Source: Dendrobates tinctorius (Eukaryota). Taken from it: a stretch of 64,000 bases of DNA. The DNA lies in contig NW_027362008.1 in the NCBI RefSeq assembly GCF_039654945.1, positions 4,154,001 through 4,218,000 on the forward strand. The letters are read 5' to 3'. A program made the position numbers and the translations under genes. The notes under the pieces were generated by a model. The model had not been told where the DNA came from, did no database searches, and saw only the letters and a program-made list of their open reading frames with translations. Below are positions 1-64,000 of the stretch, one piece after another (the first letter of the stretch is position 1; each line of letters begins with the position of its first letter).

Positions 1-699
1 ACCGGGGTCTGTGGCAGCTGAGCATGTGGACGAGGAGGCAGAATGACATGACACCGCACACTTCAGGTATAGACATAAAGTTTACTTGAACAAGACATGG
101 TACATAAACGAAACAGTTATGCAAGGCTCCCGGTTCCGCACATCAGGGAAGGGTACATGTCTCAGGATAACAGAAGAAAGGCAGGAGGTCATTACGGGTT
201 GAGCAGTCCAGGGTTGTCTGGCATGGGTATACTAGGGCGGCCTCTTCCTCAGTCCTCAGGGGTAGCAAAGGGTCACCAGGAGAATATCAGACACCGACCA
301 CAAACAGACTTCAGAAAATGGCAGGCATTGTCTGACATTTCAATCACATCCATACACGCAGTACTTCTGTATTCTCCCGCTACCCGTATTTTATCAAAAA
401 AGCTCTAATGCCAATGGACAAAAACATAAATCTTATCTATTTATAGAAACTCTTGGTTGGTTCACTATATCCTCTAATTAGTGTCCTATCTGAGTACCCG
501 GTTGCATACAAAAAAATTGAGCAATTATATTCACATATTGTCTTCACGTGATTTTCCCACTTCATTACAAACTCCCACCCGGTTCCTTCCATTAGGTTTT
601 TCCAAGGAGCAACTAACCAGAGAGTTTTATCTTAATCGCTGCTTTGAGCAACAAAAAGGCTGTTTATACACTGAGCACACATCATTTAGTCTCCATACA

Positions 700-1221
700 T
701 CAACAGAGCTGCTTTACAGTAGTACGAAATGAATATGTTGAAGTGTATTTTCCTGGGCCCAACCAGTATGTGGGTACCAAGGTGTAATGGGGTGCATAGG
801 ACTATGCAGCAGGGCAGACATTGCTGTCACTCTGTAAACAAAAGAGTAGGGGAGAACCGTATGAATATGGTGAAGTGTATTTTTTTCCTGGGCCCATCCA
901 GTATGTGGGTTCCAAGTGTTTAATGGGGTGCATATGACTATGGTATGAATCTCGGAAAAAAATATTTAAAGCTGTGAACTAGGAGTCAGGAATGCTTCCA
1001 GGGGCGATCCCCATGAATTCCCCATTTCATTTGAGCAGTGTTTAAATCATTTTCAGATGTTTCTAGACCTTAAAATGACCCCCTTGGGGGATCACAGCAA
1101 AAATGCTCGGGTTTCCCATAGACTTATATTGGGCTCGTTGTTCTGTCCGAGTACCCAAGTATTACAATTTGCTCGACCCGAACAACGAGTGCCCAAGCAT
1201 TTTAGTGCTCGCTCATCACTA
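700..1221. mobile_element. One end of a non-autonomous DNA transposon, hAT-like (also 16856-17377, 33020-33541, 49184-49705, 63206-63727)
   Basis: Ends in gtgctcgctcatcacta (TAGTGATGAGCGAG-type terminus, recalled from anuran repeats); internal ~80-bp repeat at 729 and 861; partner end not found. Confidence 0.5.
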
Positions 1222-1224
1222 ATC

Positions 1225-1651
1225 CCAGTACTTAAAAAGCGATACTCAATTCATGGAGAATAACTTCTTTGAAATTCAAATTAATTGGGAAAATCCAAAC
1301 GGTTAAGCGATTTTGAATTTTGCTGATCTGACCCATGTTATAAAACAATCTTATCATATATTGTGCACGATGAATGCCGCATGAAGGGAAAAGTGAAAAA
1401 CTGCTAAACTTGCTATTCTTGTTCATCTTACCTCACTAAAAAATTGAATTAAAAAAATCATGTATCCCAACGCTGTACCAAAACAACTAGTTTTGTACCC
1501 AAAAACATGTCCTCATGCAGATCTGCATTCAGAAAAATAAAAAGCAATGACTCTCAATATGACAGCTATAAAAAACATATTGTGATTTTCTTGGGTATGA
1601 ACATAATCATGTCAGCACACAGAATAAAGTGAACAAGTCAATTATACTGCT
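1225..1651 (-). repeat. Left arm of ~425-bp diverged inverted repeat (also 17381-17807, 33545-33971, 49709-50135, 63731-end)
   Basis: Reverse complement of 7981-8361 plus 10664-10708, e.g. gctgatctgacccatgttataaaacaatcttatca vs tgataagattgttttataacatgggtcagatcagc. Confidence 0.9.
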
Positions 1652-2815: not shown

Positions 2816-2824
2816 TGTCAAGCG

Positions 2825-3165: not shown

Positions 3166-3276
3166 CCTCCTCTGTTGAAATTGTGTTTTTAGATCTGTGT
3201 CTCTTACTATTACTCTATGACACTCAGTGTATGATAGAGAGAAATGTATTTTTCTTCTTTCTATGATTGTTATTGA

Positions 3277-6277: not shown

Positions 6278-6319
6278 TGAGAAATTGAGAATAATATAAT
6301 AGAAAAAATGTCTTTGTAA

Positions 6320-8300: not shown

Positions 8301-8361
8301 CAGATCAGCAAAATTCAAAATCGCTTAACTGTTTGGATTTTCCCAATTAATTTGATTTTCA

Positions 8362-12744: not shown

Positions 12745-14394
12745 ATGGCCACCAACATCAAGGAAGCAAGCAAGAACACGGCAAAACACCTTCTTCATCT
12801 GATATCAGAAACTTCCAAGAACCTGAAGATGATGGAAGTGACTGACCACTTTGAACTTTTGCTAGAACTTGGGACTGGATCTTTTGGAAATGTACACATG
12901 GGAAAACACAAACATTCAGGTGAGATGATGATGATGGATGATGACTATGAAGATGACTGAGCCATCAGGGTGGTTTTAGATGAATGTGAAAGATGAAATT
13001 GAAATCTGCTTGTACCCTGACAAACTGTACTTGTTAACAATCATTAAGTATGACCCTAGTTGTATCCTATCTACAACGTGTCATTAGTATTCTGCACCAC
13101 TACCCTCTAGTCTTATGAATGCTCCTGTGTAAAGTGATTGATCAGGTTGTTTATATGGTTTTAAAAGTGTTATGGAATATGATGAGGATGAACATTAACA
13201 ATTATAATGTTTATTCAACAGGACAGACCGTGGCAATTAAAATGATGGCAAAGAAGAAGACTCCAGAAGACAACTTCTTTCTGGAATATTGCATTTCACA
13301 AACCCTCAGCATTCATCGGAACATCATATTTACTCACGACATCTTCTTCCATACCAGTAGGGATTTTGTGTTTGTTCAGGAAGTGGCACCGGCCGGAAAT
13401 CTCCAGTCCATCCTTGTACCTAAAGTAAGATCTTAAGCTGTTCTCCACTTTTACATATTCAAGCATTATTCATACTGCTGAAGAAAAAAATTAGTGGTCT
13501 TTATTGTAGATCTGACATCTAACATTACCCTATTTCCTCAGATTTAATAAACTCATATTTCTGTAAGTAGCAGTATGGGACCCCCATAATTAGGCAGGTT
13601 TAGGTTGTATGAGTATGTGTGAGCTAGTAAAATCCTCTATGTGAGAGATATTTAATTTTTAGTGGAAATCTCACATTATAGAGGATATCTGATTAATAGC
13701 AGAGTAGAACTGATGTCTGCAGGAATTATATCTACTAGTAGAAGATATCTATAAGTCTTCTGTTCTTTTATATCAGATATGTTTTCCCTTCTGCTGTTCA
13801 GCTGTGTAATCTTCTGTGTTGTCTTTTTCTTAGGTCGGCATGCAGGAGGACATGTTGAAGCGTTGTGTTCCTCAGATCGCCAGTGCTCTGGACTTTATGC
13901 ATAACAGAGGAATGGTTCATCGGGATATCAAGCCGAATAATATTCTTCTGATGGATGCAGAATGTCACTGGATAAAGCTGGCAGACTTTGGACTCACCAG
14001 GCTCCAGGGCACATTTGTTCCTTTTGTGCCCTGGTATAAACCCTACACTGCTCCAGAGCTCTGCTGCCTTAGACCAGGAGAACAGTTGTTGCTACATCCT
14101 AGTCTTGATGTCTGGGCTTTTGGTGTAGTCATTTATTATGCTCTTTCTGGACTCTTTCCTTGGCATGGGGCAAAACGCGGTGATCGAGATTATAAAGAGT
14201 TTGCCTGGTGGCAGGTTGGAAGGGATCTGTCAAAAGCTCCAAAAAAGTGGAAGAAAATTTCAGTGGAGGCCAGAGTAATGTTCTGGGAACTGCTTCAAAT
14301 AAATGCCTCTAAGAGAGGCTCGGCCATTGACATTCTAAAATTTATGCACTTGCCATGGAAAGCCGAGGAATGTTCAGAGACCGAAGCAACCTGA
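12745..14394 (+). CDS. SBK1-like (SH3 domain-binding kinase family) Ser/Thr protein kinase, copy 1; exons 12745-12919, 13222-13424, 13834-14394; 312 aa
   Basis: GT-AG introns (cag|gtgaga...caacag, phase 1; aaa|gtaaga...ttcttag, phase 0) join into a 939-nt frame. Motifs: LGTGSFG, VAIK, alphaC Glu (FLEY), HRDIKPNN, DFG, PYTAPE, DVWAFG. FVQEVAPAGNL..ILVPKVG..ED..KRCV..ALDFMH and LLMDAECHWIKLADFG resemble SBK1 as recalled; a paralog, not necessarily the ortholog. Confidence 0.92.
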
Positions 14395-15515: not shown

Positions 15516-16855
15516 TGTCGGAGAAGAGATTTCTATTTCTACTTGGGTAGTTTCTGTCTTATGGGTACCTATGCAATGAAGCATAATGAGAGAGACAGAC
15601 TGCTCGCTGTGTTTCCAAATCGTCTCTAAGGTTTATTGACAGTGTGAACTTTTATAGAACAAGATCAAAAAGAAATGAAGAATACATAAGACTTGGCAAA
15701 ATAGAAAGGGAGGTTACACAATCGTTGACATAAAAAGATAGGTTATACAATGAGTTGTCAACCACATCCTCGGACACAAGATAAAATTAAATGAAAAATG
15801 ACAGGAATACAGGGGTGCTTTCCAAAAGTCAATGTGCTCTAAGTTAATAGTCATGAGTTCATATTCAAAAGATATTTTTCTAAAAAGATGTTAGAACATT
15901 TCACCTCAAAAGGGAAGAGAATGCATGTCCTTCAGATTTTCTGGGAATTGTAGGAACTGACCATTAGCCATAGGACTGTGACCACATAGACAGATGATAA
16001 CTGGATGTCACGACTAGTGACGAGTTCGCTGCCGAGCCAACACCTCCACGTCGACGACCACGACGATGTGGGGTGAGCGTCCCAAGTGGGGATGGAATGT
16101 GGACCCACTGGACCACAGGGGGGACCCAGGCCTACCCAGACTAGGGAAGAGTAGCGACCGGGGTCTGTGGCAGCTGAGCATGTGGACGAGGAGGCAGAAT
16201 GACATGACACCGCACACTTCAGGTATAGACATAAAGTTTACTTGAACAAGACATGGTACATAAACGAAACAGTTATGCAAGGCTCCCGGTTCCGCACATC
16301 AGGGAAGGGTACATGTCTCAGGATAACAGAAGAAAGGCAGGAGGTCATTACGGGTTGAGCAGTCCAGGGTTGTCTGGCATGGGTATACTAGGGCGGCCTC
16401 TTCCTCAGTCCTCAGGGGTAGCAAAGGGTCACCAGGAGAATATCAGACACCGACCACAAACAGACTTCAGAAAATGGCAGGCATTGTCTGACATTTCAAT
16501 CACATCCATACACGCAGTACTTCTGTATTCTCCCGCTACCCGTATTTTATCAAAAAAGCTCTAATGCCAATGGACAAAAACATAAATCTTATCTATTTAT
16601 AGAAACTCTTGGTTGGTTCACTATATCCTCTAATTAGTGTCCTATCTGAGTACCCGGTTGCATACAAAAAAATTGAGCAATTATATTCACATATTGTCTT
16701 CACGTGATTTTCCCACTTCATTACAAACTCCCACCCGGTTCCTTCCATTAGGTTTTTCCAAGGAGCAACTAACCAGAGAGTTTTATCTTAATCGCTGCTT
16801 TGAGCAACAAAAAGGCTGTTTATACACTGAGCACACATCATTTAGTCTCCATACA
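15516..16855 (-). mobile_element. Probable solo LTR-like element, ~1.34 kb (also 1-699 partial, 31680-33019, 47844-49183, 61866-63205)
   Basis: Ends TGTCGGAGA...TCTCCATACA; on the - strand TATAAAA (15650-15656) is closely followed by AATAAA (15632-15637); no clean TSD. Confidence 0.45.
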
Positions 16856-17807
16856 TCAACAGAGCTGCTTTACAGTAGTACGAAATGAATATGTTGAAGT
16901 GTATTTTCCTGGGCCCAACCAGTATGTGGGTACCAAGGTGTAATGGGGTGCATAGGACTATGCAGCAGGGCAGACATTGCTGTCACTCTGTAAACAAAAG
17001 AGTAGGGGAGAACCGTATGAATATGGTGAAGTGTATTTTTTTCCTGGGCCCATCCAGTATGTGGGTTCCAAGTGTTTAATGGGGTGCATATGACTATGGT
17101 ATGAATCTCGGAAAAAAATATTTAAAGCTGTGAACTAGGAGTCAGGAATGCTTCCAGGGGCGATCCCCATGAATTCCCCATTTCATTTGAGCAGTGTTTA
17201 AATCATTTTCAGATGTTTCTAGACCTTAAAATGACCCCCTTGGGGGATCACAGCAAAAATGCTCGGGTTTCCCATAGACTTATATTGGGCTCGTTGTTCT
17301 GTCCGAGTACCCAAGTATTACAATTTGCTCGACCCGAACAACGAGTGCCCAAGCATTTTAGTGCTCGCTCATCACTAATCCCAGTACTTAAAAAGCGATA
17401 CTCAATTCATGGAGAATAACTTCTCTGAAATTCAAATTAATTGGGAAAATCCAAACGGTTAAGCGATTTTGAATTTTGCTGATCTGACCCATGTTATAAA
17501 ACAATCTTATCATATATTGTGCACGATGAATGCCGCATGAAGGGAAAAGTGAAAAACTGCTAAACTTGCTATTCTTGTTCATCTTACCTCACTAAAAAAT
17601 TGAATTAAAAAAATCATGTATCCCAACGCTGTACCAAAACAACTAGTTTTGTACCCAAAAACATGTCCTCATGCAGATCTGCATTCAGAAAAATAAAAAG
17701 CAATGACTCTCAATATGACAGCTATAAAAAACATATTGTGATTTTCTTGGGTATGAACATAATCATGTCAGCACACAGAATAAAGTGAACAAGTCAATTA
17801 TACTGCT

Positions 17808-18971
17808 TACGTTTGAAAATCCACCAGGCTTCCCTATTTTGTAATGTAACCTCCGTATCACCCCCTCTGATGGGTGTGTGTATTTTTTCAATTGCATACA
17901 CCAGAAGTGTTTTCAGGTCATCTTTATGACATTCAATAAAATGTTTTGACACCTGAGATGTGTTCCTTTCCATGTTAATATTCTCTGTGTCATAGATGTG
18001 TTCCCCAATTCTTTTCTTCAGCTTGCGTTTTGTGCTTCCAACATGTTTTAGATGGCAGAAGGTGCACTCCATAATATATACCAAGGTTTTAGTGCTACAA
18101 TTGATAAAGGTTTTAGTAGCAAAATTCTTGCTTTCACTAGAATCTCCAAAGCTAGAGCTCTCTTTAGTGTATTTACAGGACTTAGCGCCACACTTATAAA
18201 AACCCTTGGTTTTCTGCCAATTTGTGGATTGAATTTGAGACATATTCAAAAAACTTGGCAAAAGGCTCTGACCTAAAGATGGTGCTCTCCTAGAGTCTAT
18301 TCTAAATCCTTTCCCTATAATACTATCTATATCTGGATCCTCTTTTAATACAGATAAATTATTTTGAATAATTCGTTCAATAGAGGCAAACTGGTTACTA
18401 CACTGCGAGACCAATGTTACAGGAGTGACTGAATGTTCATGTGTGTTACACTTAGGTTTGAATCGCGGTTTTTGAGCCACAATGTTTTCAGCTTTGCTTA
18501 AACTCCATTGGGTATAACCCCTTTGGGTCAATCGCTGCTTAATGTTAGAAACTTCCTGTTGATAATCTGTATTTGTGCTACAATTGCATTTAGCTCTTGT
18601 CATCTCCCCAACAGGTATACTTTTAATTGTATGTTTAGGATGATGGCTTTTTCCATGGAGTATAGCATTGCCTGCTGTGTTCTTTCTAAATTTTTGTGTT
18701 ACTACAGGTTTACCTGAAATTCCTTGTAAAATCAAATAAAAAAAATCAATGCATGAAATTTTATGGCGGACCACAAATTTTAAATTCAAGGGATTGCAAT
18801 TAATATAAAAATTAAAATCCTGTATGGCAGATACATCAGAATTCCAGATGATAATGATATCATCTATGTATCTGCCTTACCAATAGACACAATCTTTAAA
18901 TGGATTATTTACAGTATAAATATACAGCTCTTCCCACCAGCTCATTACCAAGTGAAATTAGCAAGTGAAGT
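17808..18971 (-). mobile_element. Penelope-like fragment, unit 2
   Basis: Identical 331-aa ORF 17794-18789. Confidence 0.9.
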
Positions 18972-19432
18972 TGTCAAGCGATCCACTATATGACCAAGAT
19001 GAAAATCTTTCTTTGCAATTGCGGCTTGTTCCCAGTCAACTTACGTGCATCGTTATATTTTACTTTTGGTTATGTGTGTTTTTCCATGCGTTATTCATCC
19101 TGTTTTGAATGTGAATGTTTTTTCTTTGTCATCTAGGAATATTTAACACCATCCACTATATGATTAAGATATAAAGTATTTTTCGCAATTGCGGCTTGTT
19201 CCTCGCTAGTTTATGTGGATTGTTATGCAAGAGCATATTGCTATCTGTGTTTTTTTATGCGATGTAGATCTGGTTTTGAATTAAATTGTTTTCATTTTTG
19301 CTTTCACCTAGGTACTTTTACCCTCCTCCGCTGAAATTGTGTTTTTAGATCTGTGTCTCTTACTATTACTCTATGACACTCAGTGTATGATAGAGAGAAA
19401 TGTATTTTTCTTCTTTCTATGATTGTTATTGA

Positions 19433-22400
19433 ATCATAGAATCATAGAATCATAGAATCATAGAATCGTAGAGTTGGAAGGGACCTCCTGGGCCATCTGG
19501 TCCAACCCCCTGCTCAAAGCAGGATTCGCTAAATCATCCCAGTCAGATGTCTGTCCAGCCTCTGTTTGAAGACTTCCATTGAAGGAGAACTCACCACTTC
19601 TCGTGGCAGCCTGTTCCACTCATTGATCACTCTAACTGTCAAAAAGTTTTTTCTAATATCTAATCTGTGTCTCTTCCCATTCAGTTTCATCCCATTGCTT
19701 CTAGTCTTTCCTTGTGCAAATGAGAATAAAGTTGATCCTTCTACAATGTGACAGCCCTTTAGATATTTGTAGACAGCTATTAAGTCTCCTCTCAGTCTTC
19801 TCTTTTGCAAACTAAACATTCCCAAATCCTGCAACCTTTCCTCATAAGACAGGGATTGCAGACCGGTCACCATTCTGGTCGCTCTTTTCTGAACTTGCTC
19901 CAGTTTGTTGATGTCTTTTTTAAAATGTGGTGCCCAAAACTGGACACAATATTCCAGATGAGGTCTGACCAAAGAGGAGTAGAGGGAAATAATGACTTCA
20001 CGTGATCTAGACTGTATGCTTCTGTTAATACATCCTAGAATTGCATTTGCCTTTTTTGCTGCTGCATCACACTGTTGACTCATGTTCAGTCTGTGATCTA
20101 TTAGTATACCCAAGTCTTTTTCACATGTGCTGTCACTTAGCCCTATTCCTCCCATTCTATATATGCTTTTTTCATTTTTATTGCCCAGATGTAGTACTTT
20201 GCATTTCTCCCTGTTAAAAACCATTCTGTTAGTTGCTGCCCACTTCTCCAGTTTATTTAAATCTTTTTGAATCCTCTCTCTCTCTTCTCTAGTATTAGCT
20301 ATCCCTCCTAGCTTTGTGTCATCAGCAAATTTAATCAGTTTACCCTCAATTCCTTCATCTAAATCGTTGATAAAGATGTTGAACAATACAGGGCCCAGGA
20401 CAGAGCCCTGTGGTACCCCACATGAGACATTCTTCCAACTGGATGTGCAGCCATTTACGACCACTCTTTGGGTCCGATCACTAAGCCAGTTATGAATCCA
20501 CCTAACAGTTGCCTTGTCCATTCCATACTTAGTCATTTTTTCAATAAGGATTGTATGAGAGACTTTGTCAAATGCTTTGCTGAAGTCAAGATATACTATA
20601 TCTACAGCATTTCCTTGATCCACCCAATCAGTGATACCGTCATAGAAGGAAATTAAGTTAGTCTGACATGACTTATTAGTTAGAAACCCATGCTGACTCT
20701 GTTTAATCACTTCATTCTTATCCAGGTATTGACATACAAGTTGTTTAATAATTTGTTCAAAGATCTTTCCTGGTATAGAAGTCAGACTCACCGGCCTATA
20801 GTTGCCTGGGTCCACCTTCTTCCCCTTTTTGAAGATAGGAACAACATTTGCTCTTCTCCAGTCTTCTGGCACTTCTCCTGTTCTCCAAGAATTTTCAAAG
20901 ATTATGGAGAGGGGTTCAAAAATTTCTTCTGCTATCTCCTTCAGTACTCTGGGGTGTAATTCATCTGGACCTGGAGACTTGAATTCATTTAGGTTAGCTA
21001 ACTGTTTCCTCACTATCTTTCTGTTTATAGATATCCTGGATTCTTCTATTCCCTTAATAGGACAGTGAATAACAGTTGATGTTGCATTTCCTTTCTGAGA
21101 GAAAGCAGATGCAAAATAGGAATTTAAAAGTTCAGCCTTCTCAACATCCTGTCTTACCATTTCATCATTTTCATCCTGTAAAAATCCTATAGCATCTTTG
21201 ACTTTTCTTTTACTTTTGACATATCCCCAAAATCCTTTATTATTGCTTTTGACATCTCTTGCAAGCCTCAGTTCATTTTCAGCTTTAGCTAATATGATTT
21301 GTGCCCTGCAGGTTCTGCAGACAGCATTATATTCTTCTTTAGATATGCCTCCCTCTTTCCATTTTATAAACATTTTTTTCTTCCTTTTAGCATGTGCTTA
21401 AGTTCTGTGTTCATCCATCCTGGTTTCCTTAAATGCTTCCTATTCTTCCCTCTTTTCGGAATTGTTAACAACTGTGCTTTGAGAATTTCATTTTTCAAGA
21501 TTTCCCATCCTTCCTGGACATTTTTGTCTTTAAGGATATCCAGCCATTGGATCCCTCCAATTCTCTTTCTGAATCCCTTAAAATCTGCCTTTCTGAAATC
21601 TAACCTTGACGTCTGAGTCTTCACAGGTCTTCCACCTCTAGTAATCCAAAATTCTAAAATAGCATGGTCGCTACCTCCTAGGGTCCCAGCCACTTTTACC
21701 TCCTCAACCATTTCCTCCCTGTTTATAAGGATTAGATCCAAGGTAGCAGTTCCCCTTGTTTTCTCCCTTACCTTTTGGAAGATAAAGTTGTCAGCAAGAG
21801 AGGATAAGAATTTCCTTGACCTGTTAGTTTTGCCTGAGAGAGATTCCCAACAAATGTCTGGATAGTTGAAATCTCCCATGACAACTATGTCATATTTTTT
21901 GGAGAACTTGGCCATCTGATGCATAAAGAGTTCATCTATATCTTTGGCTTGCACAGGCGGCCTGTAGTAAATGCCTACAATGGTGTCCTTTCCATTGTTC
22001 TGTCCTTGTATTCTTACGCAAACAGTTTCCACAGAACTCCCAGTCTCTGAAGCTTCAATCTCTGTGCAGATATACGCGTTTTGAACATACAATGCGACAC
22101 CCCCTCCTCGTTTATCAAGTCTGTTTCTTGCAAATAAGTTGTATCCTTCTAGTCTTGTATTCCAATCATGTGTATTGTCCCACCAAGTTTCAGTGATTCC
22201 AATTACATCATATTTCTGTTCCTGTGTTAGTAGTTCCAATTCTCCTTGTTTGTTGCCCATGCTTTGTGCATTAGTATAGAAACATTTTAGTTTGTGATTG
22301 GTTTCTCTTTCTCCAATATTTTTATTAATTAGATTCTTTCGTCTTTGTTCTTCCTTTCCACTTCTAATAGAAGAGTTCTCAATAGCATTTGTCAGGTGTA

Positions 22401-22441
22401 TGGCTTTTTCTGGTCTTTTGCTTCCCTTCCCATGTTGTTCT
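19433..22441 (-). mobile_element. CR1 insertion A, unit 2
   Basis: Same junctions; 1-bp frameshift at ~21385 splits ORF2 (21364-22536 / 19529-21373). Confidence 0.96.
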
Positions 22442-24525
22442 TGAGAAATTGAGAATAATATAATAGAAAAAATGTCTTTGTAAGGCTGTGTGCCCACATT
22501 GCGCTTTTTCAGAGTTTCCGTGGTGATTTTAAACAAGTGATTCTGCCGCTGAAATGCTTAAGAAAATCATTCCATGTTATCATAATTGATTCCGCACATG
22601 TTGTGCTAATGGTGCGTATTTTACCGCTGCGGAATTGCTTAGCGGTAAAAAACACAGCATGTTCATTAATTTTGTGGAATCGCATGCGATTATGCATACA
22701 TACACTTGTATTGCAAAAGCGCATAGGAAATCGCATGTTAAAACATATGACAAATGCATCAAAATTGCTAAAATCTTCAAAACTGCATGCGTTTTTCCAG
22801 CTAAGGGTGTGCGTTTCTCCTCAGGAATATTCTACTTCAAAACTGCAATGTGGGCACATAGCCTGAAAGTGGCTTTTCTATCCTCTAGTCTGAGTAGATG
22901 GCTGTAATTTTTCATTCTGACGTTTGATCCATCATATGATTTTCACTCTGTTCCAGAGTGAAATTGTATTTTCCTCTTTGGTTGTTTTGTAAAAACTCAA
23001 CATCAATTTTTACAATTATGGTTCTTTCATTTGCTCCCTTATATAAATGTATATTTCTCTACTTCTGTACTGTGGCTGCTAAGAAGAATTTACAATATAC
23101 TGCGTTTGTTCTGCGCAATTGAAATACATTCTCGCCTTTATGCCATGTGGAAATCACATTCCTGATTTTAGCCATGTATGTCTTCACTTGTAATTCATTT
23201 ACGTTAATTAGATATGTTAATTGTCTTTCACTAGTGTTCAGCATATTAGTGCTTTCTCGAACAATGCCTGTTATCATGACTAAGGGTGCTGGGACACCTG
23301 AAACGCGTTGATAACACAATCTTATGTACCATTCATGCTGATATTTTATCTATTCACATCTGAGTGAATAAAGAATTTGTGTTTTCACTTCTGGATCATG
23401 GCTTTTTTGTTACATTAGCCATACCTTTCTTTTCTGGGCAATATAGATGTAAAAGTGTTTTTTAAGTATCAGTTATATTTGTCAATACACTTTTTAAGTG
23501 GAACTTATTAGCATGATTTTATAAGCACTTTTTTGCAAGAGAAATAAAGAAAACAGTAATTTTAACATTTATTTGTAGTTTAAAGTTTGTGTTATCTGAT
23601 TTGCTGAAAAAATAAAGCAGTAACTGCATTCAGTAGGTCAGTACTAATATGGTGCTGGTAAATTTGTATAATCTTAATTGTTTTTTATGTTTTGTACAAT
23701 ATACACTTTAAAAAAAACCCATTTTTATACTGTTTTACAATTTTTTGTTAGTGGCGTGGTATGAAGATTTATTTTTGCCTGAAAATCTGTAGCTTTTGTT
23801 GTTAACAGTTTGTTGTACATGCAACTTTTTGATCACTTTTACATTATTTAGGAGGCAAAATGAAAGAAAAACACGTAAATTCTGAATTTGTTTTAATATT
23901 TTTTTAAACCCCAGTCACTGTTGGGTATAACTGTCATGGTATCTTTATTTGGTGGACGATATCATCACCATATTCTCATAAACTTCACTTATTTATTTTT
24001 CGGTTTATTGTAGGTGACGCTGATTGAGGCTTTGTTTTTGGTTATATATGCCTTTCTAGTTATTATTTATCTCATTGTTTTGCTGGGAAGCAGAAACAAA
24101 CAGCTATGAATTGGAAATAGTTGTTATTTTTATGGAGTTCGTCCAGCAGTATAATTGACATGATTACTTTATTCTGTGTGCTGATATGATTATGTTCATA
24201 TCTAAGAAAATCACAATACATTTTTTATAGCTGTCACATTGTGAGTCAATGCTTTGTATTTTTCTGACTGCAGATCTGTATGAGGACATGTTTTTGGGTA
24301 ACAAACTAGTTATTTTGGTATAGCATCGGGATACATGATTTTTTAATTCAGTTTTTTAGTGAGGTAAGATGAACAAAAATAGCAAGTTTAGCAGTTTCTC
24401 ACTTTTCCCCTCATACGGCATTGATCATGCACAATAAATGATAAGATTGTTTTATAACATGGGTCAGATCAGCAAAATTCAAAATCGCTTAACTGTTTGG
24501 ATTTTCCCAATTAATTTGATTTTCA

Positions 24526-26819
24526 TAGAATCATAGAATCATAGAATCATAGAATCGTAGAGTTGGAAGGGACCTCCTGGGCCATCTGGTCCAACCCCCT
24601 GCTCAAAGCAGGATTCGCTAAATCATCCCTGTTAGATGTCTGTCCAGCCTCTGTTTGAAGACTTCCATTGAAGGAGAACTCACCACTTCTCGTGGCAGCC
24701 TGTTCCACTCATTGATCACTCTAACTGTCAAAAAGTTTTTTCTAATATCTAATCTGTGTCTCCTCCCATTCAGCTTCATCCCATTGCTTCTAGTCTTTCC
24801 TTGTGCAAATGAGAATAAAGTTGATCCTTCTACAATGTGACAGCCCTTTAGATATTTGTAGACAGCTATTAAGTCTCCTCTCAGTCTTCTCTTTTGCAAA
24901 CTAAACATTCCCAAATCCTGCAACCTTTCCTCATAAGACAGGGTTTGCAGACCGGTCACCATTCTGGTCGCTCTTTTCTGAACTTGCTCCAGTTTGTTGA
25001 TGTCTTTTTTAAAATGTGGTGCCCAAAATTGGACACAATATTCCAGATGAGGTCTGACCAAAGAGGAGTAGAGGGAAATAATTACTTCACGTGATCTAGA
25101 CTGTATGCTTCTGTTAATACATCCTAGAATTGCATTTGCCTTTTTTGCTGCTGCATCACACTGTTGACTCATATTCAGTCTGTGATCTATTAGTATACCC
25201 AAGTCTTTTTCACATATGCTGTCACTTAGCCCTATTCCTCCCATTCTATATATGCTTTTTTCATTTTTATTGCCCAGATGTAGTACTTTGCATTTCTCCC
25301 TGTTAAAAACCATTCTGTTAGTTGCTGCCCACTTCTCCAGTTTATTTAAATCTTTTTGAATCCTCTCTCTCTCTTCTCTAGTATTAGCTATCCCTCCTAG
25401 CTTTGTGTCATCAGCAAATTTAATCAGTTTACCCTCAATTCCTTCATCTAAATCGTTGATAAAGATGTTGAACAATACAGGGCCCAGGACAGAGCCCTGT
25501 GGTACCCCACTTGAGACATTCTTCCAACTGGATGTGCTGCCATTTACGACCACTCTTTGGGTCCGATCACTAAGCCAGTTATGAATCCACCTAACAGTTG
25601 CCTTGTCCATTCCATACTTAGTCATTTTTTCAATAAGGATTGTATGAGAGACTTTGTCAAATGCTTTGCTGAAGTCAAGATATACTATATCTACAGCATT
25701 TTCTTGATCCACCCAATCAGTGATACCGTCATAGAAGGAAATTAAATTAGTCTGACATGACTTATTATTTACAAACCCATGCTGACTCTGTTTAATCACT
25801 TCATTCTTATCCAAGTATTGACATACATGTTGTTTAATAATTTGTTCAAAGATCTTTCCTGGTATAGAAGTCAGACTCACCGGCCTATAGTTGCCTGGGT
25901 CCACCTTCTTCCCCTTTTTGAAGATAGGAACAACATTTGCTCTTCTCCAGTCTTCTGGCACTTCTCCTGTTCTCCAAGAATTTTCAAAGATTATGGAGAG
26001 GGGTTCAAAAATTTCTTCTGCTATCTCCTTCAGTACTCTGGGGTGTAATTCATCTGGACCTGGAGACTTGAATTCATTTAGGTTAGCTAAGTGTTTCCTC
26101 ACTATCTTTCTGTTTATAGATATCCTGGATTCTTCTATTCCCTTAATAGGACAGTGAATAACAGTTGATGTTACATTTCCTTTCTGAGAGAAAACAGATG
26201 CAAAATAGGAATTTAAAAGTTCAGCCTTCTCAACATCCTGTCTTACCATTTCATCATTTTCATCCTGTAAAAATCCTATAGCATCTTTGACTTTTCTTTT
26301 ACTTTTGACATATCCCCAAAATCCTTTATTATTGCTTTTGACATCTCTTGCAAGTCTCAATTCATTTTCAGCTTTAGATAATCTGATTTGTGCCCTGCAG
26401 GTTCTGCAGACAGCATTATATTCTTCTTTAGATATGCCTCCCTCTTTCCATTTTATAAACATTTTTTTCTTCCTTTTTAGCATGTGCTTAAGTTCTGTGT
26501 TCATCCATCCTGGTTTCCTTAAATGCTTCCTATTCTTCCCTCTTTTCGGAATTGTTAACAACTGTGCTTTGAGAATTTCATTTTTCAAGATTTCCCATCC
26601 TTCCTGGACATTTTTGTCTTTAAGGATATCCAGCCATTGGATCCCTCCAATTCTCTTTCTGAATCCCTTAAAATCTGCCTTTCTGAAATCTAACGTTGAC
26701 GTCTGAGTCTTCACAGGTCTTCCGCCTCTAGTTATCCAAAATTCTAAAATAGCATGGTCGCTACCTCCTAGGGTCCCAGCCACTTTTACCTCCTCAACCA
26801 TTTCCTCCCTGTTTATAAG
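24526..26819 (-). mobile_element. CR1 insertion B, unit 2 (ORF 24618-26801)
   Basis: Same site; right TSD copy reads AATTTTCA. Confidence 0.96.
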
Positions 26820-28466: not shown

Positions 28467-28687
28467 GGCCAATGACAATATCCCACTAATTAACAACCCC
28501 CTGCTCTTCCCAGATATAAACTGTTTCCTCCTCTCAGTGACATCTACTTCACTCCAGGTATTATTTGTGGTCAGAACTGGCCTCTGAGGAGCATCAAGCT
28601 GTAGACTTGTTGGTGTACAGGAGGAGTTCAGCACCGACTATCATCTCTTTCAGTAGCAGTAGACATCTTCAATCTCCATCTACAAAG
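28467..28687 (+). promoter_or_regulatory. Putative kinase promoter and first exon, copy 2
   Basis: Same motifs at +16164. Confidence 0.58.
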
Positions 28688-28908
28688 GTGAATATATGAT
28701 AAGTATAGCACAGCATATAGTAGATGGTATTACTGCAGATCCCTGGGGAATTATGCAATGCTGGAACATTATTACAGTGACTGCACACTATTATACAATT
28801 GTGCATTTCTAGTCGCAGTTTACACGAGGTGATTACAGTATGTTATTATGGGTCTCAAAGATGTTTCATGCTTTATTCAATGCCATATCTCATTTCATTT
28901 TATTCAGA

Positions 28909-45072: not shown

Positions 45073-46722
45073 ATGGCCACCAACATCAAGGAAGCAAGCA
45101 AGAACACGGCAAAACACCTTCTTCATCTGATATCAGAAACTTCCAAGAACCTGAAGATGATGGAAGTGACTGACCACTTTGAACTTTTGCTAGAACTTGG
45201 GACTGGATCTTTTGGAAATGTACACATGGGAAAACACAAACATTCAGGTGAGATGATGATGATGGATGATGACTATGAAGATGACTGAGCCATCAGGGTG
45301 GTTTTAGATGAATGTGAAAGATGAAATTGAAATCTGCTTGTACCCTGACAAACTGTACTTGTTAACAATCATTAAGTATGACCCTAGTTGTATCCTATCT
45401 ACAACGTGTCATTAGTATTCTGCACCACTACCCTCTAGTCTTATGAATGCTCCTGTGTAAAGTGATTGATCAGGTTGTTTATATGGTTTTAAAAGTGTTA
45501 TGGAATATGATGAGGATGAACATTAACAATTATAATGTTTATTCAACAGGACAGACCGTGGCAATTAAAATGATGGCAAAGAAGAAGACTCCAGAAGACA
45601 ACTTCTTTCTGGAATATTGCATTTCACAAACCCTCAGCATTCATCGGAACATCATATTTACTCACGACATCTTCTTCCATACCAGTAGGGATTTTGTGTT
45701 TGTTCAGGAAGTGGCACCGGCCGGAAATCTCCAGTCCATCCTTGTACCTAAAGTAAGATCTTAAGCTGTTCTCCACTTTTACATATTCAAGCATTATTCA
45801 TACTGCTGAAGAAAAAAATTAGTGGTCTTTATTGTAGATCTGACATCTAACATTACCCTATTTCCTCAGATTTAATAAACTCATATTTCTGTAAGTAGCA
45901 GTATGGGACCCCCATAATTAGGCAGGTTTAGGTTGTATGAGTATGTGTGAGCTAGTAAAATCCTCTATGTGAGAGATATTTAATTTTTAGTGGAAATCTC
46001 ACATTATAGAGGATATCTGATTAATAGCAGAGTAGAACTGATGTCTGCAGGAATTATATCTACTAGTAGAAGATATCTATAAGTCTTCTGTTCTTTTATA
46101 TCAGATATGTTTTCCCTTCTGCTGTTCAGCTGTGTAATCTTCTGTGTTGTCTTTTTCTTAGGTCGGCATGCAGGAGGACATGTTGAAGCGTTGTGTTCCT
46201 CAGATCGCCAGTGCTCTGGACTTTATGCATAACAGAGGAATGGTTCATCGGGATATCAAGCCGAATAATATTCTTCTGATGGATGCAGAATGTCACTGGA
46301 TAAAGCTGGCAGACTTTGGACTCACCAGGCTCCAGGGCACATTTGTTCCTTTTGTGCCCTGGTATAAACCCTACACTGCTCCAGAGCTCTGCTGCCTTAG
46401 ACCAGGAGAACAGTTGTTGCTACATCCTAGTCTTGATGTCTGGGCTTTTGGTGTAGTCATTTATTATGCTCTTTCTGGACTCTTTCCTTGGCATGGGGCA
46501 AAACGCGGTGATCGAGATTATAAAGAGTTTGCCTGGTGGCAGGTTGGAAGGGATCTGTCAAAAGCTCCAAAAAAGTGGAAGAAAATTTCAGTGGAGGCCA
46601 GAGTAATGTTCTGGGAACTGCTTCAAATAAATGCCTCTAAGAGAGGCTCGGCCATTGACATTCTAAAATTTATGCACTTGCCATGGAAAGCCGAGGAATG
46701 TTCAGAGACCGAAGCAACCTGA
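45073..46722 (+). CDS. SBK1-like kinase, copy 3; exons 45073-45247, 45550-45752, 46162-46722
   Basis: Same protein and splice sites as copy 1. Confidence 0.92.
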
Positions 46723-59094: not shown

Positions 59095-60744
59095 ATGGCC
59101 ACCAACATCAAGGAAGCAAGCAAGAACACGGCAAAACACCTTCTTCATCTGATATCAGAAACTTCCAAGAACCTGAAGATGATGGAAGTGACTGACCACT
59201 TTGAACTTTTGCTAGAACTTGGGACTGGATCTTTTGGAAATGTACACATGGGAAAACACAAACATTCAGGTGAGATGATGATGATGGATGATGACTATGA
59301 AGATGACTGAGCCATCAGGGTGGTTTTAGATGAATGTGAAAGATGAAATTGAAATCTGCTTGTACCCTGACAAACTGTACTTGTTAACAATCATTAAGTA
59401 TCACCCTAGTTGTATCCTATCTACAACGTGTCATTAGTATTCTGCACCACTACCCTCTAGTCTTATGAATGCTCCTGTGTAAAGTGATTGATCAGGTTGT
59501 TTATATGGTTTTAAAAGTGTTATGGAATATGATGAGGATGAACATTAACAATTATAATGTTTATTCAACAGGACAGACCGTGGCAATTAAAATGATGGCA
59601 AAGAAGAAGACTCCAGAAGACAACTTCTTTCTGGAATATTGCATTTCACAAACCCTCAGCATTCATCGGAACATCATATTTACTCACGACATCTTCTTCC
59701 ATACCAGTAGGGATTTTGTGTTTGTTCAGGAAGTGGCACCGGCCGGAAATCTCCAGTCCATCCTTGTACCTAAAGTAAGATCTTAAGCTGTTCTCCACTT
59801 TTACATATTCAAGCATTATTCATACTGCTGAAGAAAAAAATTAGTGGTCTTTATTGTAGATCTGACATCTAACATTACCCTATTTCCTCAGATTTAATAA
59901 ACTCATATTTCTGTAAGTAGCAGTATGGGACCCCCATAATTAGGCAGGTTTAGGTTGTATGAGTATGTGTGAGCTAGTAACATCCTCTATGTGAGAGATA
60001 TTTAATTTTTAGTGGAAATCTCACATTATAGAGGATATCTGATTAAGAGCAGAGTAGAACTGATGTCTGCAGGAATTATATCTACTAGTAGAAGATATCT
60101 ATAAGTCTTCTGTTCTTTTATATCAGATATGTTTTCCCTTCTGCTGTTCAGCTGTGTAATCTTCTGTGTTGTCTTTTTCTTAGGTCGGCATTCAGGAGGA
60201 CATGTTGAAGCGTTGTGTTCCTCAGATCGCCAGTGCTCTGGACTTTATGCATAACAGAGGAATGGTTCATCGGGATATCAAGCCGAATAATATTCTTCTG
60301 ATGGATGCAGAATGTCACTGGATAAAGCTGGCAGACTTTGGACTCACCAGGCTCCAGGGCACATTTGTTCCTTTTGTGCCCTGGTATAAACCCTACACTG
60401 CTCCAGAGCTCTGCTGCCTTAGACCAGGAGAACAGTTGTTGCTACATCCTAGTCTTGATGTCTGGGCTTTTGGTGTAGTCATTTATTATGCTCTTTCTGG
60501 ACTCTTTCCTTGGCATGGGGCAAAACGCGGTGATCGAGATTATAAAGAGTTTGCCTGGTGGCAGGTTGGAAGGGATCTGTCAAAAGCTCCAAAAAAGTGG
60601 AAGAAAATTTCAGTGGAGGCCAGAGTAATGTTCTGGGAACTGCTTCAAATAAATGCCTCTAAGAGAGGCTCGGCCATTGACATTCTAAAATTTATGCACT
60701 TGCCATGGAAAGCCGAGGAATGTTCAGAGACCGAAGCAACCTGA
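59095..60744 (+). CDS. SBK1-like kinase, copy 4; exons 59095-59269, 59572-59774, 60184-60744 (M129I)
   Basis: Intact; ATG>ATT at 60190-60192 is an internal missense change, not a start loss. Confidence 0.92.
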
Positions 60745-62506
60745 TATGTTGAATCTATGACAAACTGCAATATGATATTTGTTTTTTTAATCAATAATGT
60801 CTACAAAGCAGACTGTGAACTATTGTAAATAGCTCAATAAATGAATAAAACAGACTTGAATCTTACTAAAGTTTATCTCGAGAAAAACAGAAAAAAATAT
60901 AGAAGTTACGGGTATACGAACATGGGACACTCCCAAAACATTTTTTAAGTCAGTTTTTTTCATAAAAGTAACAAAACATAAAAAGTGATATAGAAAAGGA
61001 ATTGCCATGGTATTGCTATTCATATTCTACATATTTCACATTGACATGCTTTAGCACTACAGAGTGCATCTTTTTTGTTTATTGAAAATGAAGGTAACTG
61101 CACCTAGTTGGCTCCTGTTCACATTAGCTTGGAAGTGCCAGTCTTTTTGTCACTAAAAAAATAATACTGGTACTTTATTCCCAAATTTGATAAATATGCT
61201 GAGCCTCCATCTTGCTATTTGCACTGGATATTATGCCCATTGGTTAAGAAAACTCCCTTGGTTATACAGGACTCAAGATTTTTTACAAATACAGGATGAT
61301 TTTGATTGACAAGAATTATTGCAGCTGGTGACAATCCTTGTGCTTTTGCTTTGCACACAATTCCTTTCAATTTGCAGGACCCTGGTATAACCAGGCAGCT
61401 GATACAGCAATGGATTCACCAGTTGCCGTGACTTGTATACTGTATATATTTTTTGGAGAAAGATACTTAATTTGAACAATCCATTTCTATTACATATCAA
61501 ATTATTCTTACAATTTAAAGACAATATTCTTATAGTAAGAAGAGATGTGTCTTTTACTTTTTGGAAAGCATGCAGTAAAAAATAAAATCATTATGAGTCA
61601 GCACAAATTCTAATAATTTGAAAACAAAACTCTTGTGTGACTGAATATGATTGCCCTTTGTGCTCAAAAATATTTTACTGCCTGAGTTCCCAATTCATAA
61701 CAGATTCTGGTATAAAATGTCTCAATGTAAAGTCTCACTATTATTCTTGTGGGTGGCCAGGACTTCCAGCATCACCAGACCTCTGACTTCACTGTGCCTT
61801 TGTTGGGAAAAAACTTGGCACTCATAGTAAAATCAGAGGATTTTATATTTGAATTTATTTAACATTGTCGGAGAAGAGATTTCTATTTCTACTTGGGTAG
61901 TTTCTGTCTTATGGGTACCCATGCAATGAAGCATAATGAGAGAGACAGACTGCTCGCTGTCTTTCCAAATAGTCTCTAAGGTTTATTGACAGTGTGAACT
62001 TTTATAGAACAAGATCAAAAAGAAATGAAGAATACATAAGAATTGGCAAAATAGAAAGGGAGGTTACACAATCGTTGACATAAAAAGATAGGTTATACAA
62101 TGAGTTGTCAACCACATCCTCGGACACAAGATAAAATTAAATGAAAAATGACAGGAATACAGGGGTGCTTTCCAAAAGTCAATGTGCTCTAAGTTAATAG
62201 TCATGAGTTCATATTCAAAAGATATTTTTCTAAAAAGATGTTAGAACATTTCACCTCAAAAGGGAAGAGAATGCATGTCCTTCAGATTTTCTGGGAATTG
62301 TAGGAACTGACCATTAGCCATAGGACTGTGACCACATAGACAGATGATAACTGGATGTCACGACTAGTGACGAGTTCGCTGCCGAGCCAACACCTCCACG
62401 TCGACGACCACGACGATGTGGGGTGAGCGTCCCAAGTGGGGATGGAATGTGGACCCACTGGACCACAGGGGGGACCCAGGCCTACCCAGACTAGGGAAGA
62501 GTAGCG

Positions 62507-64000
62507 ACCGGGGTCTGTGGCAGCTGAGCATGTGGACGAGGAGGCAGAATGACATGACACCGCACACTTCAGGTATAGACATAAAGTTTACTTGAACAAG
62601 ACATGGTACATAAACGAAACAGTTATGCAAGGCTCCCGGTTCCGCACATCAGGGAAGGGTACATGTCTCAGGATAACAGAAGAAAGGCAGGAAGTCATTA
62701 CGGGTTGAGCAGTCCAGGGTTGTCTGGCATGGGTATACTAGGGCGGCCTCTTCCTCAGTCCTCAGGGGTAGCAAAGGGTCACCAGGAGAATATCAGACAC
62801 CGACCACAAACAGACTTCAGAAAATGGCAGGCATTGTCTGACATTTCAATCACATCCATACACGCAGTACTTCTGTATTCTCCCGCTACCCGTATTTTAT
62901 CAAAAAAGCTCTAATGCCAATGGACAAAAACATAAATCTTATCTATTTATAGAAACTCTTGGTTGGTTCACTATATCCTCTAATTAGTGTCCTATCTGAG
63001 TACCCGGTTGCATGCAAAAAAATTGAGCAATTATATTCACATATTGTCTTCACGTGATTTTCCCACTTCATTACAAACTCCCACCCGGTTCCTTCCATTA
63101 GGTTTTTCCAAGGAGCAACTAACCAGAGAGTTTTATCTTAATCGCTGCTTTGAGCAACAAAAAGGCTGTTTATACACTGAGCACACATCATTTAGTCTCC
63201 ATACATCAACAGAGCTGCTTTACAGTAGTACGAAATGAATATGTTGAAGTGTATTTTCCTGGGCCCAACCAGTATGTGGGTACCAAGGTGTAATGGGGTG
63301 CATAGGACTATGCAGCAGGGCAGACATTGCTGTCACTCTGTAAACAAAAGAGTAGGGGAGAACCGTATGAATATGGTGAAGTGTATTTTTTTCCTGGGCC
63401 CATCCAGTATGTGGGTTCCAAGTGTTTAATGGGGTGCATATGACTATGGTATGAATCTCGGAAAAAAATATTTAAAGCTGTGAACTAGGAGTCAGGAATG
63501 CTTCCAGGGGCGATCCCCATGAATTCCCCATTTCATTTGAGCAGTGTTTAAATCATTTTCAGATGTTTCTAGACCTTAAAATGACCCCCTTGGGGGATCA
63601 CAGCAAAAATGCTCGGGTTTCCCATAGACTTATATTGGGCTCGTTGTTCTGTCTGAGTACCCAAGTATTACAATTTGCTCGACCCGAACAACGAGTGCCC
63701 AAGCATTTTAGTGCTCGCTCATCACTAATCCCAGTACTTAAAAAGCGATACTCAATTCATGGAGAATAACTTCTCTGAAATTCAAATTAATTGGGAAAAT
63801 CCAAACGGTTAAGCGATTTTGAATTTTGCTGATCTGACCCATGTTATAAAACAATCTTATCATATATTGTGCACGATGAATGCCGCATGAAGGGAAAAGT
63901 GAAAAACTGCTAAACTTGCTATTCTTGTTCATCTTACCTCACTAAAAAATTGAATTAAAAAAATCATGTATCCCAACGCTGTACCAAAACAACTAGTTTT
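62507..64000 (+). repeat. Tandem array unit 5 (partial)
   Basis: Matches 1-1494; the array continues beyond the window. Confidence 0.97.

What the first reader, a model, noticed from the sequence alone, without database searches (positions are those of the whole stretch)
1..64000. Ampliconic tandem array of an intact, divergent SBK1-like kinase gene
Seen: at least four complete, nearly identical kinase genes, one per 14-16 kb unit. All keep their splice sites, promoter motifs and polyA signals, and the array runs off both window ends. Only one amino-acid difference (M129I) appears among the copies, while the flanking transposon ORFs carry stops and frameshifts. Known: SBK1/2/3 are normally single-copy vertebrate genes, and amplified divergent kinase families are often germline- or conflict-related (e.g. 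mouse Smok kinases). Inference: a lineage-specific, dosage-amplified kinase family under concerted evolution; its function cannot be read from the sequence.
Basis: partly seen in the sequence, partly recalled or inferred. Interest (0 to 1): 0.8.

Follow-up and report, generated by a model that had tools for sequence, protein, structure and literature searches.

The report
Young tandem array of frog kinase genes
The window is a real stretch of a 300-kb head-to-tail array of 18 nearly identical copies of a small, intact protein kinase gene in the dyeing poison frog; the gene belongs to an amphibian-only branch of the SBK kinase family that many frogs have amplified, so this is a clear but familiar kind of gene amplification whose purpose is still unknown.

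Summary
Observation confirmed. The window (Dendrobates tinctorius scaffold JAYMGB010000340.1:4154001-4218000) holds four complete three-exon kinase genes in head-to-tail units of 16,164, 16,164 and 14,022 bp. Units are about 99.7% identical, and M129I in copy 4 is the only amino-acid difference. The whole array has 18 RefSeq "SBK1-like" genes over about 300 kb: 13 near-identical central copies and 96-97% identical edge copies. One edge copy is frameshifted and one has HRD changed to HQD.

Interpretation partly supported.
- The gene belongs to an anuran SBK-like clade sister to an axolotl clade, separate from the SBK1, SBK2-like and SBK3-like clades. No pipid member was found.
- The clade is multi-copy in many amphibians, for example bullfrog and Pelobates.
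- All catalytic residues are kept and the fold is confident (pLDDT 93).
- dN/dS is 0.24-0.38 between species, and pN/pS is 0.15 among the central copies.
- Identity spans whole units, transposons included. Units of 11.07 and 21.25 kb show unequal exchange between CR1 elements.

Expression of these copies is not shown. The only RNA-like run contains spliced transcripts of a diverged, frameshifted relative. Dosage and germline or conflict roles remain untested.

First readers noted the same array on neighbouring windows (s1-362249, s1-376939). I found no paper describing it.

The parts
12745..14394 (+). Kinase gene copy 1 (coding part): exons 12745-12919, 13222-13424, 13834-14394. Encodes the 312-aa protein P0001.
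28909..30558 (+). Kinase gene copy 2: exons 28909-29083, 29386-29588, 29998-30558 (stop included). Introns of 302 and 409 nt, both GT-AG. Encodes P0001 exactly.
45073..46722 (+). Kinase gene copy 3: exons 45073-45247, 45550-45752, 46162-46722. Encodes P0001.
59095..60744 (+). Kinase gene copy 4: exons 59095-59269, 59572-59774, 60184-60744. Carries M129I (G>T at 60192, the equivalent of 30006). Otherwise intact.
30650..30663 (+). Two overlapping-spaced AATAAA polyadenylation signals 92 and 100 nt after the stop. The same pair occurs at 14486/14494, 46814/46822 and 60836/60844.
28358..28557 (+). Candidate 5' untranslated exon. It ends at a CAG|GT donor, and the ATG exon starts after an AG acceptor at 28906-28907. 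Support is one low-depth contig of an RNA-like run. The splice between this exon and the ATG exon was not seen.
   Evidence: inference
16157..32320 (.). One full 16,164-bp repeat unit. Units also span 1-16156 (first, cut by the window start), 32321-48484, 48485-62506 (14,022 bp) and 62507-64000 (cut by the window end).
19431..22441 (-). CR1-like LINE copy with endonuclease and reverse transcriptase ORFs, split into 390 + 614 aa. Equivalents at 3264-6277, 35595-38605 and 50951-53962 (910-aa ORF in unit 4).
24517..26823 (-). Second, 5'-truncated CR1-like LINE copy (727-aa RT ORF). It is 98.8% identical to the first copy and lies 5,086 bp from it. Equivalents at 8353-10659 and 40681-42987. It is missing from unit 4.
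17794..18789 (-). 331-aa ORF of a Penelope-like or GIY-YIG-type element (language-model features resemble HTH_animal/GIY-YIG clusters). Equivalents at 1638-2633 and 33958-34953. In unit 4 it is broken into two ORFs (50122-50858).
30824..30957 (.). Short, very high-copy interspersed repeat just downstream of the gene. Contig word depth is 12,000-51,000 in DNA runs of related species.

Best explanation
The window is part of a real, young tandem amplification. Eighteen head-to-tail copies over about 300 kb carry a compact three-exon gene for a Ser/Thr kinase. The kinase belongs to an amphibian-specific SBK-like clade.

How the array arose (shown and inferred): all D. tinctorius copies descend from one ancestral unit that had already acquired two CR1-like LINE insertions after the split from Ranitomeya and Phyllobates. 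The unit then multiplied by unequal crossing-over between units. Exchanges between the two CR1 copies inside units keep remodelling it. The 13 central copies coalesce very recently, at about 0.2% pairwise divergence. On my rough calibration this is a few hundred thousand years. The edge copies are older (3-4% divergence) and are starting to decay.

What each central unit contains: a complete transcription unit with intact splice sites and polyA signals. The encoded 312-aa protein is a kinase domain only, with every catalytic residue present.

Selection: the coding sequence has been under purifying selection between species and, on a small count, among the young copies.

Inferred, not shown: the copies are expressed, and copy number raises the dose of the kinase.
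For: Array structure and extent. All 15 copies with DNA in hand are on the + strand, and no stray fragments were found in 252 kb.

Real rather than artefact:
- Copies differ by private and neighbour-shared substitutions.
- Units differ in structure: 11.07, 14.02, 16.16 and 21.25 kb.
- Edge copies are 96-97% identical.
- Independent assemblies of Ranitomeya and Phyllobates also hold arrays.

Single-unit origin: the CR1 insertions are shared by all D. tinctorius units, including the edge units. They are absent from the P. terribilis and R. variabilis units.

Unequal exchange: an 11.07-kb unit (chimeric CR1, 5.09 kb lost) sits next to a 21.25-kb unit (5.09 kb duplicated).

Whole-unit homogeneity: 63 variable columns in 16.16 kb among three units.

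Kinase competence:
- Pfam Pkinase E = 2e-46.
- Invariant G-loop, K65, E80, HRD, N162, DFG and APE.
- AlphaFold pLDDT 93, pTM 0.90.
- Nearest solved folds are CHK1 kinase domains.

Selection:
- dN/dS is 0.24-0.38 against R. variabilis and P. terribilis, and 0.12-0.29 for edge against central copies.
- Among the 13 central copies there are 7 synonymous and 4 non-synonymous changes, pN/pS 0.15, binomial P = 0.003.
Against: No transcript of the window's own copies was seen.
- In the one RNA-like run of the same organism label (X6), the exon contigs differ from the window by 1.5-12%.
- Those contigs carry a 1-nt deletion at the start of exon 3 that gives an early stop, and one has a 139-nt internal gap.
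- They do not cover exon 1.
- They continue 5' into sequence that is absent from the array loci.
- No transcript-derived protein falls in the 90% cluster of P0001.

The within-array selection test is small. Synonymous density is 2.6 times the non-coding density, and with a strong transition bias P rises to about 0.03 (and my estimate).

Copy number rests on one assembly of an unplaced 7.2-Mb scaffold. Contig depths cannot give copy number.

One edge copy is frameshifted with G45V, and one has HRD changed to HQD.
Confidence: 0.65

Rival explanations
1. The expansion is neutral, caused by recombination rather than selection. The 16-kb unit with its two same-orientation CR1 copies is prone to unequal crossing-over. 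On this view copy number drifted upward without any dosage benefit, most copies are silent, and they look intact only because they are too young to have decayed.
For: - Identity is equally high in transposons and in the gene.
- Only about 11 coding changes exist among the 13 central copies, so zero disabling changes is expected fairly often by chance (my estimate).
- Edge copies do decay: a frameshift plus G45V, and HRD changed to HQD.
- No transcript of the central copies was seen.
Against: - pN/pS is 0.15 among the central copies (P = 0.003-0.03).
- Long-term dN/dS is 0.24-0.38.
- The clade is kept intact and multi-copy across about 200 million years of frogs.
- Splice and polyA signals are identical in every copy.
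Confidence: 0.25
2. The array is a conflict- or reproduction-related ampliconic family, analogous to mouse Smok or the human TSPY array. On this view it is expressed in the germline, may be sex-linked or involved in transmission distortion, and is amplified in an arms race.
For: - The clade has been amplified repeatedly and in a species-specific way in Dendrobatidae, Ranidae, Pelobates and Ambystoma.
- Its protein evolves faster than is usual for kinases, with 86-88% identity within one family of frogs.
- The substrate-facing activation segment varies across the clade.
- The array sits on an unplaced scaffold.
Against: There are no data on tissue, sex linkage or copy-number variation. Overall dN/dS is below 1 with no sign of positive selection tested. 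In Ranitomeya and Phyllobates the locus lies on a very large ordinary chromosome.
Confidence: 0.1
3. The array is an assembly artefact: one or a few copies were over-expanded by the assembler.
For: Units are 99.7% identical, close to the resolving limit of long reads. The scaffold is unplaced. I had no independent read-depth check, because the single read-laying run returned only contigs.
Against: - Units differ by about 35 substitutions per pair, plus indels and structural variants. Variants shared by neighbours give a tree-like history.
- Divergence rises from 0.2% in the centre to 3-4% at the edges.
- Three other dendrobatid assemblies also have arrays.
Confidence: 0.05

Closest known systems
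SBK (SH3-domain binding kinase; NKF1) family: SBK1, SBK2, SBK3
   Same: It is the best-matching named family. It has a Pkinase domain with SBK-type motifs (LGxGxYG, HRDIKxxN, KLADFGLTR, PYxAPE, DVWAFGV). In the tree it lies inside the SBK radiation relative to a mollusc outgroup.
   Different: - It forms its own anuran clade, sister to an axolotl clade, at about 40-47% identity to SBK1, SBK2-like and SBK3-like proteins.
- It is a 312-aa kinase domain without the long C-terminal tail of SBK1.
- The S-G-T of the P+1 loop is replaced by S/P-W-x-x (P-W-Y-K in D. tinctorius).
- It is multi-copy rather than single-copy.
Human TSPY array and other protein-coding macrosatellites or ampliconic genes (from general knowledge)
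   Same: Head-to-tail units of 10-20 kb, each with a complete gene, more than 99% identical, homogenised by unequal exchange.
   Different: Sex linkage, germline expression and copy-number polymorphism are not known here. The gene family is unrelated.
   Same: An amplified, fast-evolving Ser/Thr kinase family.
   Different: Smok kinases are MARK-related, not SBK-related (general knowledge). There is no evidence here for testis expression or for transmission distortion.
RefSeq gene models XP_073418306 to XP_073418323, 'serine/threonine-protein kinase SBK1-like' of Dendrobates tinctorius
   Same: These models are the same genes. P0001 is encoded at nine places, three of them in the window.
   Different: The automatic annotation names the genes. 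It does not describe the array, its age, its clade or its selection regime.

Membership tests
Eukaryotic protein kinase (catalytically competent) | Pkinase domain with Gly-rich loop, VAIK Lys, alphaC Glu, HRD Asp, catalytic-loop Asn, DFG and APE | tested here: met
   Pfam PF00069 E = 2e-46. G43/G45/G48, K65, E80, H155-R156-D157, N162, D177-F178-G179 and P200-E201 are invariant in a 37-sequence alignment. Model pLDDT is 93.
SBK / NKF1 kinase family | Closest named relatives are SBK proteins, and the tree places the gene within the SBK radiation | tested here: met
   All named hits are SBK1, SBK1-like, SBK2 or SBK3. Rooted on the mollusc sequence, the remaining SBK clades group together at 98* and the gene lies inside that group.
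SBK1 orthologue | Groups with vertebrate SBK1 and has the long proline-rich, SH3-binding C-terminal tail | tested here: not met
   True SBK1 sequences (Rhinoderma SBK1, Rhinatrema, Hymenochirus) form a different clade. P0001 ends about 17 residues after the kinase domain.
Ser/Thr kinases with the canonical G-T P+1 loop | G-T-x-x-Y-x-A-P-E in the activation segment | tested here: not met
   D. tinctorius has V-P-W-Y-K-P-Y-T-A-P-E. The anuran clade has S-W-x-x-P-Y. The SBK2-like clade also lacks G-T.
Ampliconic / macrosatellite gene array | Head-to-tail units of several kb, more than 99% identical, each with an intact gene | tested here: met
Ampliconic / macrosatellite gene array | Copy-number polymorphism among individuals; germline-restricted expression; sex linkage | not testable with these tools
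Concerted evolution of a tandem family | Paralogues within a species are closer to each other than to orthologues in other species | tested here: met
   Copies of D. tinctorius, P. terribilis, Pelobates and Bufo cluster by species, and those of R. variabilis and R. imitator largely do so (SH-aLRT 89-100).
Concerted evolution of a tandem family | An ancestral array homogenised later, as opposed to independent recent duplications | tested here: inconclusive
   Units of the three dendrobatid genera share only the roughly 3.8-kb gene core and have different intergenic content. Both histories fit.
Concerted evolution of a tandem family | Direct traces of unequal exchange | tested here: met
   Units of 11.07 kb and 21.25 kb (16.16 kb minus and plus 5.09 kb) with chimeric or triplicated CR1, plus the 14.02-kb unit in the window.

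The most novel reading that the evidence does not exclude
The SBK-like clade of frogs and axolotl may be a recurrently and independently amplified, fast-evolving kinase family that is tied to reproduction or genetic conflict. It could, for example, be an egg, sperm or early-embryo factor whose dose is fought over, or a sex-linked ampliconic gene. On this reading the D. tinctorius array is its youngest expansion.
Probability: 0.1. Interest if true: 0.75.

Novelty: new member of a known kind. Interest (0 to 1): 0.4.

Why it matters
The array is a clean natural example of how a vertebrate gene array grows and is remodelled. All copies trace to one unit, central copies are younger than edge copies, and both the deletion and the duplication product of exchange between two LINE copies are preserved side by side.

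It also points to an SBK-like kinase clade of frogs and axolotl that has not been studied. No member of the clade turned up in Xenopus or other pipids, which may explain why it has gone unnoticed. Many frogs and the axolotl have amplified it.

If the copies are expressed, copy number would set the dose of an active kinase and might vary among individuals. If they are not expressed, the array is simply a by-product of repeat-driven recombination.

Tried and rejected
- Solved structures by sequence: only generic kinases (RAD53, CaMKII, DCLK1) and no SBK structure.
- Rfam on one full unit at E up to 0.1: no RNA family. The hammerhead ribozyme proposed by another note is therefore not supported by Rfam models.
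- Literature: six searches on SBK1-like, SBK1/2/3, amphibian, poison frog and D. tinctorius genome. Nothing on this clade or array turned up. Papers on SBK2 and SBK3 concern mammalian heart.
- Copy number from public runs: not possible. All four runs laid were contigs, whose depth is not a copy number. One relative's DNA run has the gene region at about 440-750 against about 21 in a flank. I treat this only as a hint.
- Expression of the window's copies: not shown.
- The 30-nt sequence that precedes exon 2 in the RNA-like contig was searched with up to 5 errors in the window and all fetched loci. It was not found.
- Deciding between an ancestral array and independent duplications by comparing unit boundaries across species: inconclusive.
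- The large representative protein search was not used, because the word search settled the family.
Exon 3 was searched by reference. Full-length searches used the stored database protein P0001, which equals the conceptual splice. Exons were joined only inside scripts for the codon counts.
- Complex prediction was not used. No binding claim is made.
Full report
**What is in the window.** K-mer offsets and self-BLAST show a tandem repeat. Window 1-34786 matches 16157-50949 at 99.72% and 1-18622 matches 32321-50949 at 99.77%. A fourth, shorter unit spans 48485-62506 and a fifth starts at 62507. There are no N runs.

ORF listing and Pfam show a protein-kinase C-lobe ORF on the + strand once per unit. 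They also show LINE endonuclease and reverse-transcriptase ORFs on the - strand.

The kinase gene has three coding exons. In copy 2 they are 28909-29083, 29386-29588 and 29998-30558. The donors are CAG|GTGAGA and AAA|GTAAGA, and the acceptors are CAACAG| and TCTTAG|. A brute-force GT-AG model translates exactly to the database protein P0001.

Four complete copies start at 12745, 28909, 45073 and 59095. All four share the same splice sites, the same AG acceptor one base before the ATG, and two AATAAA signals 92 and 100 nt after the stop. The only amino-acid difference in the window is M129I in copy 4. This position is M, L, I or V in other members of the family.

**Where it comes from and how big the array is.** Exon 3, searched by reference, is 100% identical to 'serine/threonine-protein kinase SBK1-like' of Dendrobates tinctorius (P0001, 312 aa). 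The 90% cluster of P0001 has nine distinct proteins. Their accessions run from XP_073418306 to XP_073418323, all on the 7.24-Mb scaffold JAYMGB010000340.1.

Exact look-ups place P0001 at nine sites and the variants at others. The window is 4,154,001-4,218,000 of that scaffold. The first gene starts at 3,980,114 and the last ends at 4,281,151, so 18 genes span about 300 kb.

In the 252 kb I hold, all 15 copies are on the + strand and there are no unannotated fragments. ATG-to-ATG spacing ranges from 10.5 to 30 kb.

**Age structure.** The 13 central copies are 99.7-100% identical over the gene. The first and last copies are 96.3% and 96.8% identical.
- The second copy has a 1-nt deletion in exon 2, a 3-nt deletion and G45V in the glycine loop. 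RefSeq rescued it as a 275-aa model that starts in intron 1.
- One late copy has R156Q, which changes HRD to HQD.

Three full units in the window differ at only 63 of 16,165 columns, and nearly half of these lie in the CR1 copies. The gene region is not special in this respect. Homogeneity is therefore a property of whole units.

**Mechanism of growth.** Every D. tinctorius unit, including the edge units, carries the same two CR1-like insertions. The 8.17-kb units of Phyllobates terribilis (three copies) and the units of Ranitomeya variabilis (two fetched copies, 21 kb apart) share only about 3.8 kb around the gene and lack these insertions. The whole D. tinctorius array thus descends from one unit that existed after the split from those genera.

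The two CR1 copies lie 5,086 bp apart in the same orientation and are 98.8% identical. Units of 11.07 kb have one chimeric CR1 and have lost 5.09 kb. A unit of 21.25 kb has three CR1s and has duplicated 5.09 kb. One unit of each kind lie next to each other at record 4,014,784-4,047,106. The 14.02-kb unit in the window is a further CR1-mediated rearrangement. These are direct traces of unequal exchange.

Rough dating is inference. It uses non-coding divergence to Ranitomeya of about 0.13 and a split of 20-30 million years recalled from memory. On that basis the central copies date to a few hundred thousand years and the edge copies to several million years.

**What the gene is.** A word search with P0001 returned SBK-named proteins only. 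A maximum-likelihood tree of 80 sequences gave the following.
- A strongly supported anuran clade (SH-aLRT 99) follows the frog phylogeny from Ascaphus and Bombina to Dendrobatidae.
- It is sister to an Ambystoma clade (98).
- It is separate from a true SBK1 clade, from an SBK2-like clade that holds the Xenopus and Hymenochirus sequences, and from an SBK3-like clade.
- No pipid sequence falls in the anuran clade. This is absence among search hits, not proof of loss.

The clade is multi-copy in many species.
- Bullfrog has dozens of models on one chromosome.
- Pelobates fuscus has eleven consecutive accessions with identical proteins at several loci.
- Rana, Lithobates, Hyperolius, Ranitomeya (at least five each) and axolotl also have several copies.

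Copies cluster by species, so turnover or homogenisation is general in this clade.

**Is the protein competent?** Pfam Pkinase matches at E = 2e-46 over residues 38-295. All catalytic residues are present and invariant across 37 family members. The AlphaFold model has pLDDT 93 and pTM 0.90, with an ordered activation segment and an N-terminal helix. The nearest solved folds are CHK1 kinase domains at 25-27% identity.

The protein lacks the long tail of SBK1. The S-G-T of the P+1 loop is replaced by P-W-Y-K here and by S-W-x-x in other frogs. The SBK2-like clade also lacks G-T.

**Selection.** NG86 dN/dS is 0.24 against R. variabilis, 0.34-0.36 against P. terribilis, and 0.12-0.29 between edge and central copies.

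Among all 13 central copies there are 7 synonymous and 4 non-synonymous changes (H35N, M129I, R244Q, F296C). There are also 9 intron changes and 13 flanking changes. pN/pS is 0.15, and non-synonymous changes are too few at P = 0.003. With strong transition bias P would be about 0.03.

One caveat is that synonymous density is 2.6 times the non-coding density (P = 0.03), and I cannot explain this.

**Expression.** One run with the same organism code as the presumed source (X6) covers exons 2 and 3 at high depth. It does not cover the bulk of either intron (one diverged contig, 29862-30026, reaches the last ~135 nt of intron 2), so it behaves as RNA. Two loose ends join CCTAAA to GTCGGCATGCA, exactly the predicted exon 2-exon 3 junction.

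The transcripts are nevertheless not those of the window's copies.
- They differ at 29462, 29502 (D98N), 30112, 30294, 30362, 30473 (S285C) and 30475.
- They lack one G at 30009-30010, which gives an early stop.
- One abundant contig lacks 139 nt of exon 3.
- Exon 1 is not covered.
- The sequence before exon 2 is not found in any array locus.

A second RNA-like run from a related species also covers only exons 2 and 3. Two DNA runs of relatives cover exons and introns alike.

The family is therefore transcribed and spliced, but the expression of the intact central copies is neither shown nor excluded.

**Comparison and verdict.** It is wrong to treat the gene as a derivative of single-copy SBK1-3, and its claims on dosage and germline conflict are unsupported.

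RefSeq already annotates the genes. I found no paper on the clade or the array. First readers of this scan noted the same array on neighbouring windows.

I rate it a new member of a known kind, a young tandem gene amplification. It is of moderate interest, mainly for the preserved recombination products and for the unstudied, repeatedly amplified amphibian kinase clade.

Full-length searches used the stored protein P0001.

Noticed in passing
L001-L003, record 4,014,784-4,047,106 of JAYMGB010000340.1 (upstream of the window): An 11.07-kb unit (one chimeric CR1, 5.09 kb lost) lies directly next to a 21.25-kb unit (three CR1 copies, the same 5.09 kb gained). The pair keeps the length of two normal units, as if the segment had been shifted from one unit to its neighbour.
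   Followed up: partly
L010:20518-21667 (second gene of the array, record about 3,990,631): This edge copy has a 1-nt deletion early in exon 2, a 3-nt deletion, G45V in the glycine loop, and unrelated sequence from the middle of intron 2 onward. RefSeq models it as a 275-aa protein starting in intron 1. It is probably a pseudogene.
   Followed up: partly
P0110 (XP_073418321), beyond the window's end: This late copy has R156Q, turning the HRD motif into HQD, plus six other substitutions. P0107 has P160T in the catalytic loop. It does not apply to the window's copies.
   Followed up: partly
window 17794-18789 (-), also 1638-2633 and 33958-34953: The 331-aa ORF has no Pfam hit at threshold. By language-model features it resembles HTH_animal/GIY-YIG clusters, as in Penelope-like elements. 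In unit 4 the ORF is broken in two.
   Followed up: partly
window 16157-32320: A Rfam scan of one full unit at E up to 0.1 finds no RNA family. The hammerhead ribozyme that another note reports in every unit is therefore not recognised by the Rfam hammerhead models.
   Followed up: partly
window 30824-30957: A very high-copy short repeat sits immediately downstream of each gene. Contig depth is 12,000-51,000 in DNA runs of related frogs. It is probably a SINE or MITE.
   Followed up: no
run X6 laid on window 29383-30560: Abundant spliced transcripts of a diverged relative of this gene carry a 1-nt deletion at the start of exon 3 and a different 5' part. Their locus is not among the 15 array copies I hold.
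   Followed up: partly
P0242, P0237, P0248 (bullfrog and leopard frog): RefSeq models named 'ribosomal protein S6 kinase alpha-6-like' sit in the same 90% clusters. The two I scanned (P0242, P0237) contain two Pkinase domains. They look like read-through fusions of two adjacent SBK-like copies, and so are misnamed.
   Followed up: partly
one search hit list and the tree: No Xenopus or Hymenochirus protein falls in the anuran SBK-like clade. Their best matches (41-42%) belong to the SBK2-like clade. This suggests the clade was lost in pipids.
   Followed up: partly
window 28909-30558 and the 12 other central copies: Synonymous variation among the central copies (7 in about 198 sites) is 2.6 times denser than variation in introns and flanks. 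This is unexplained.
   Followed up: no
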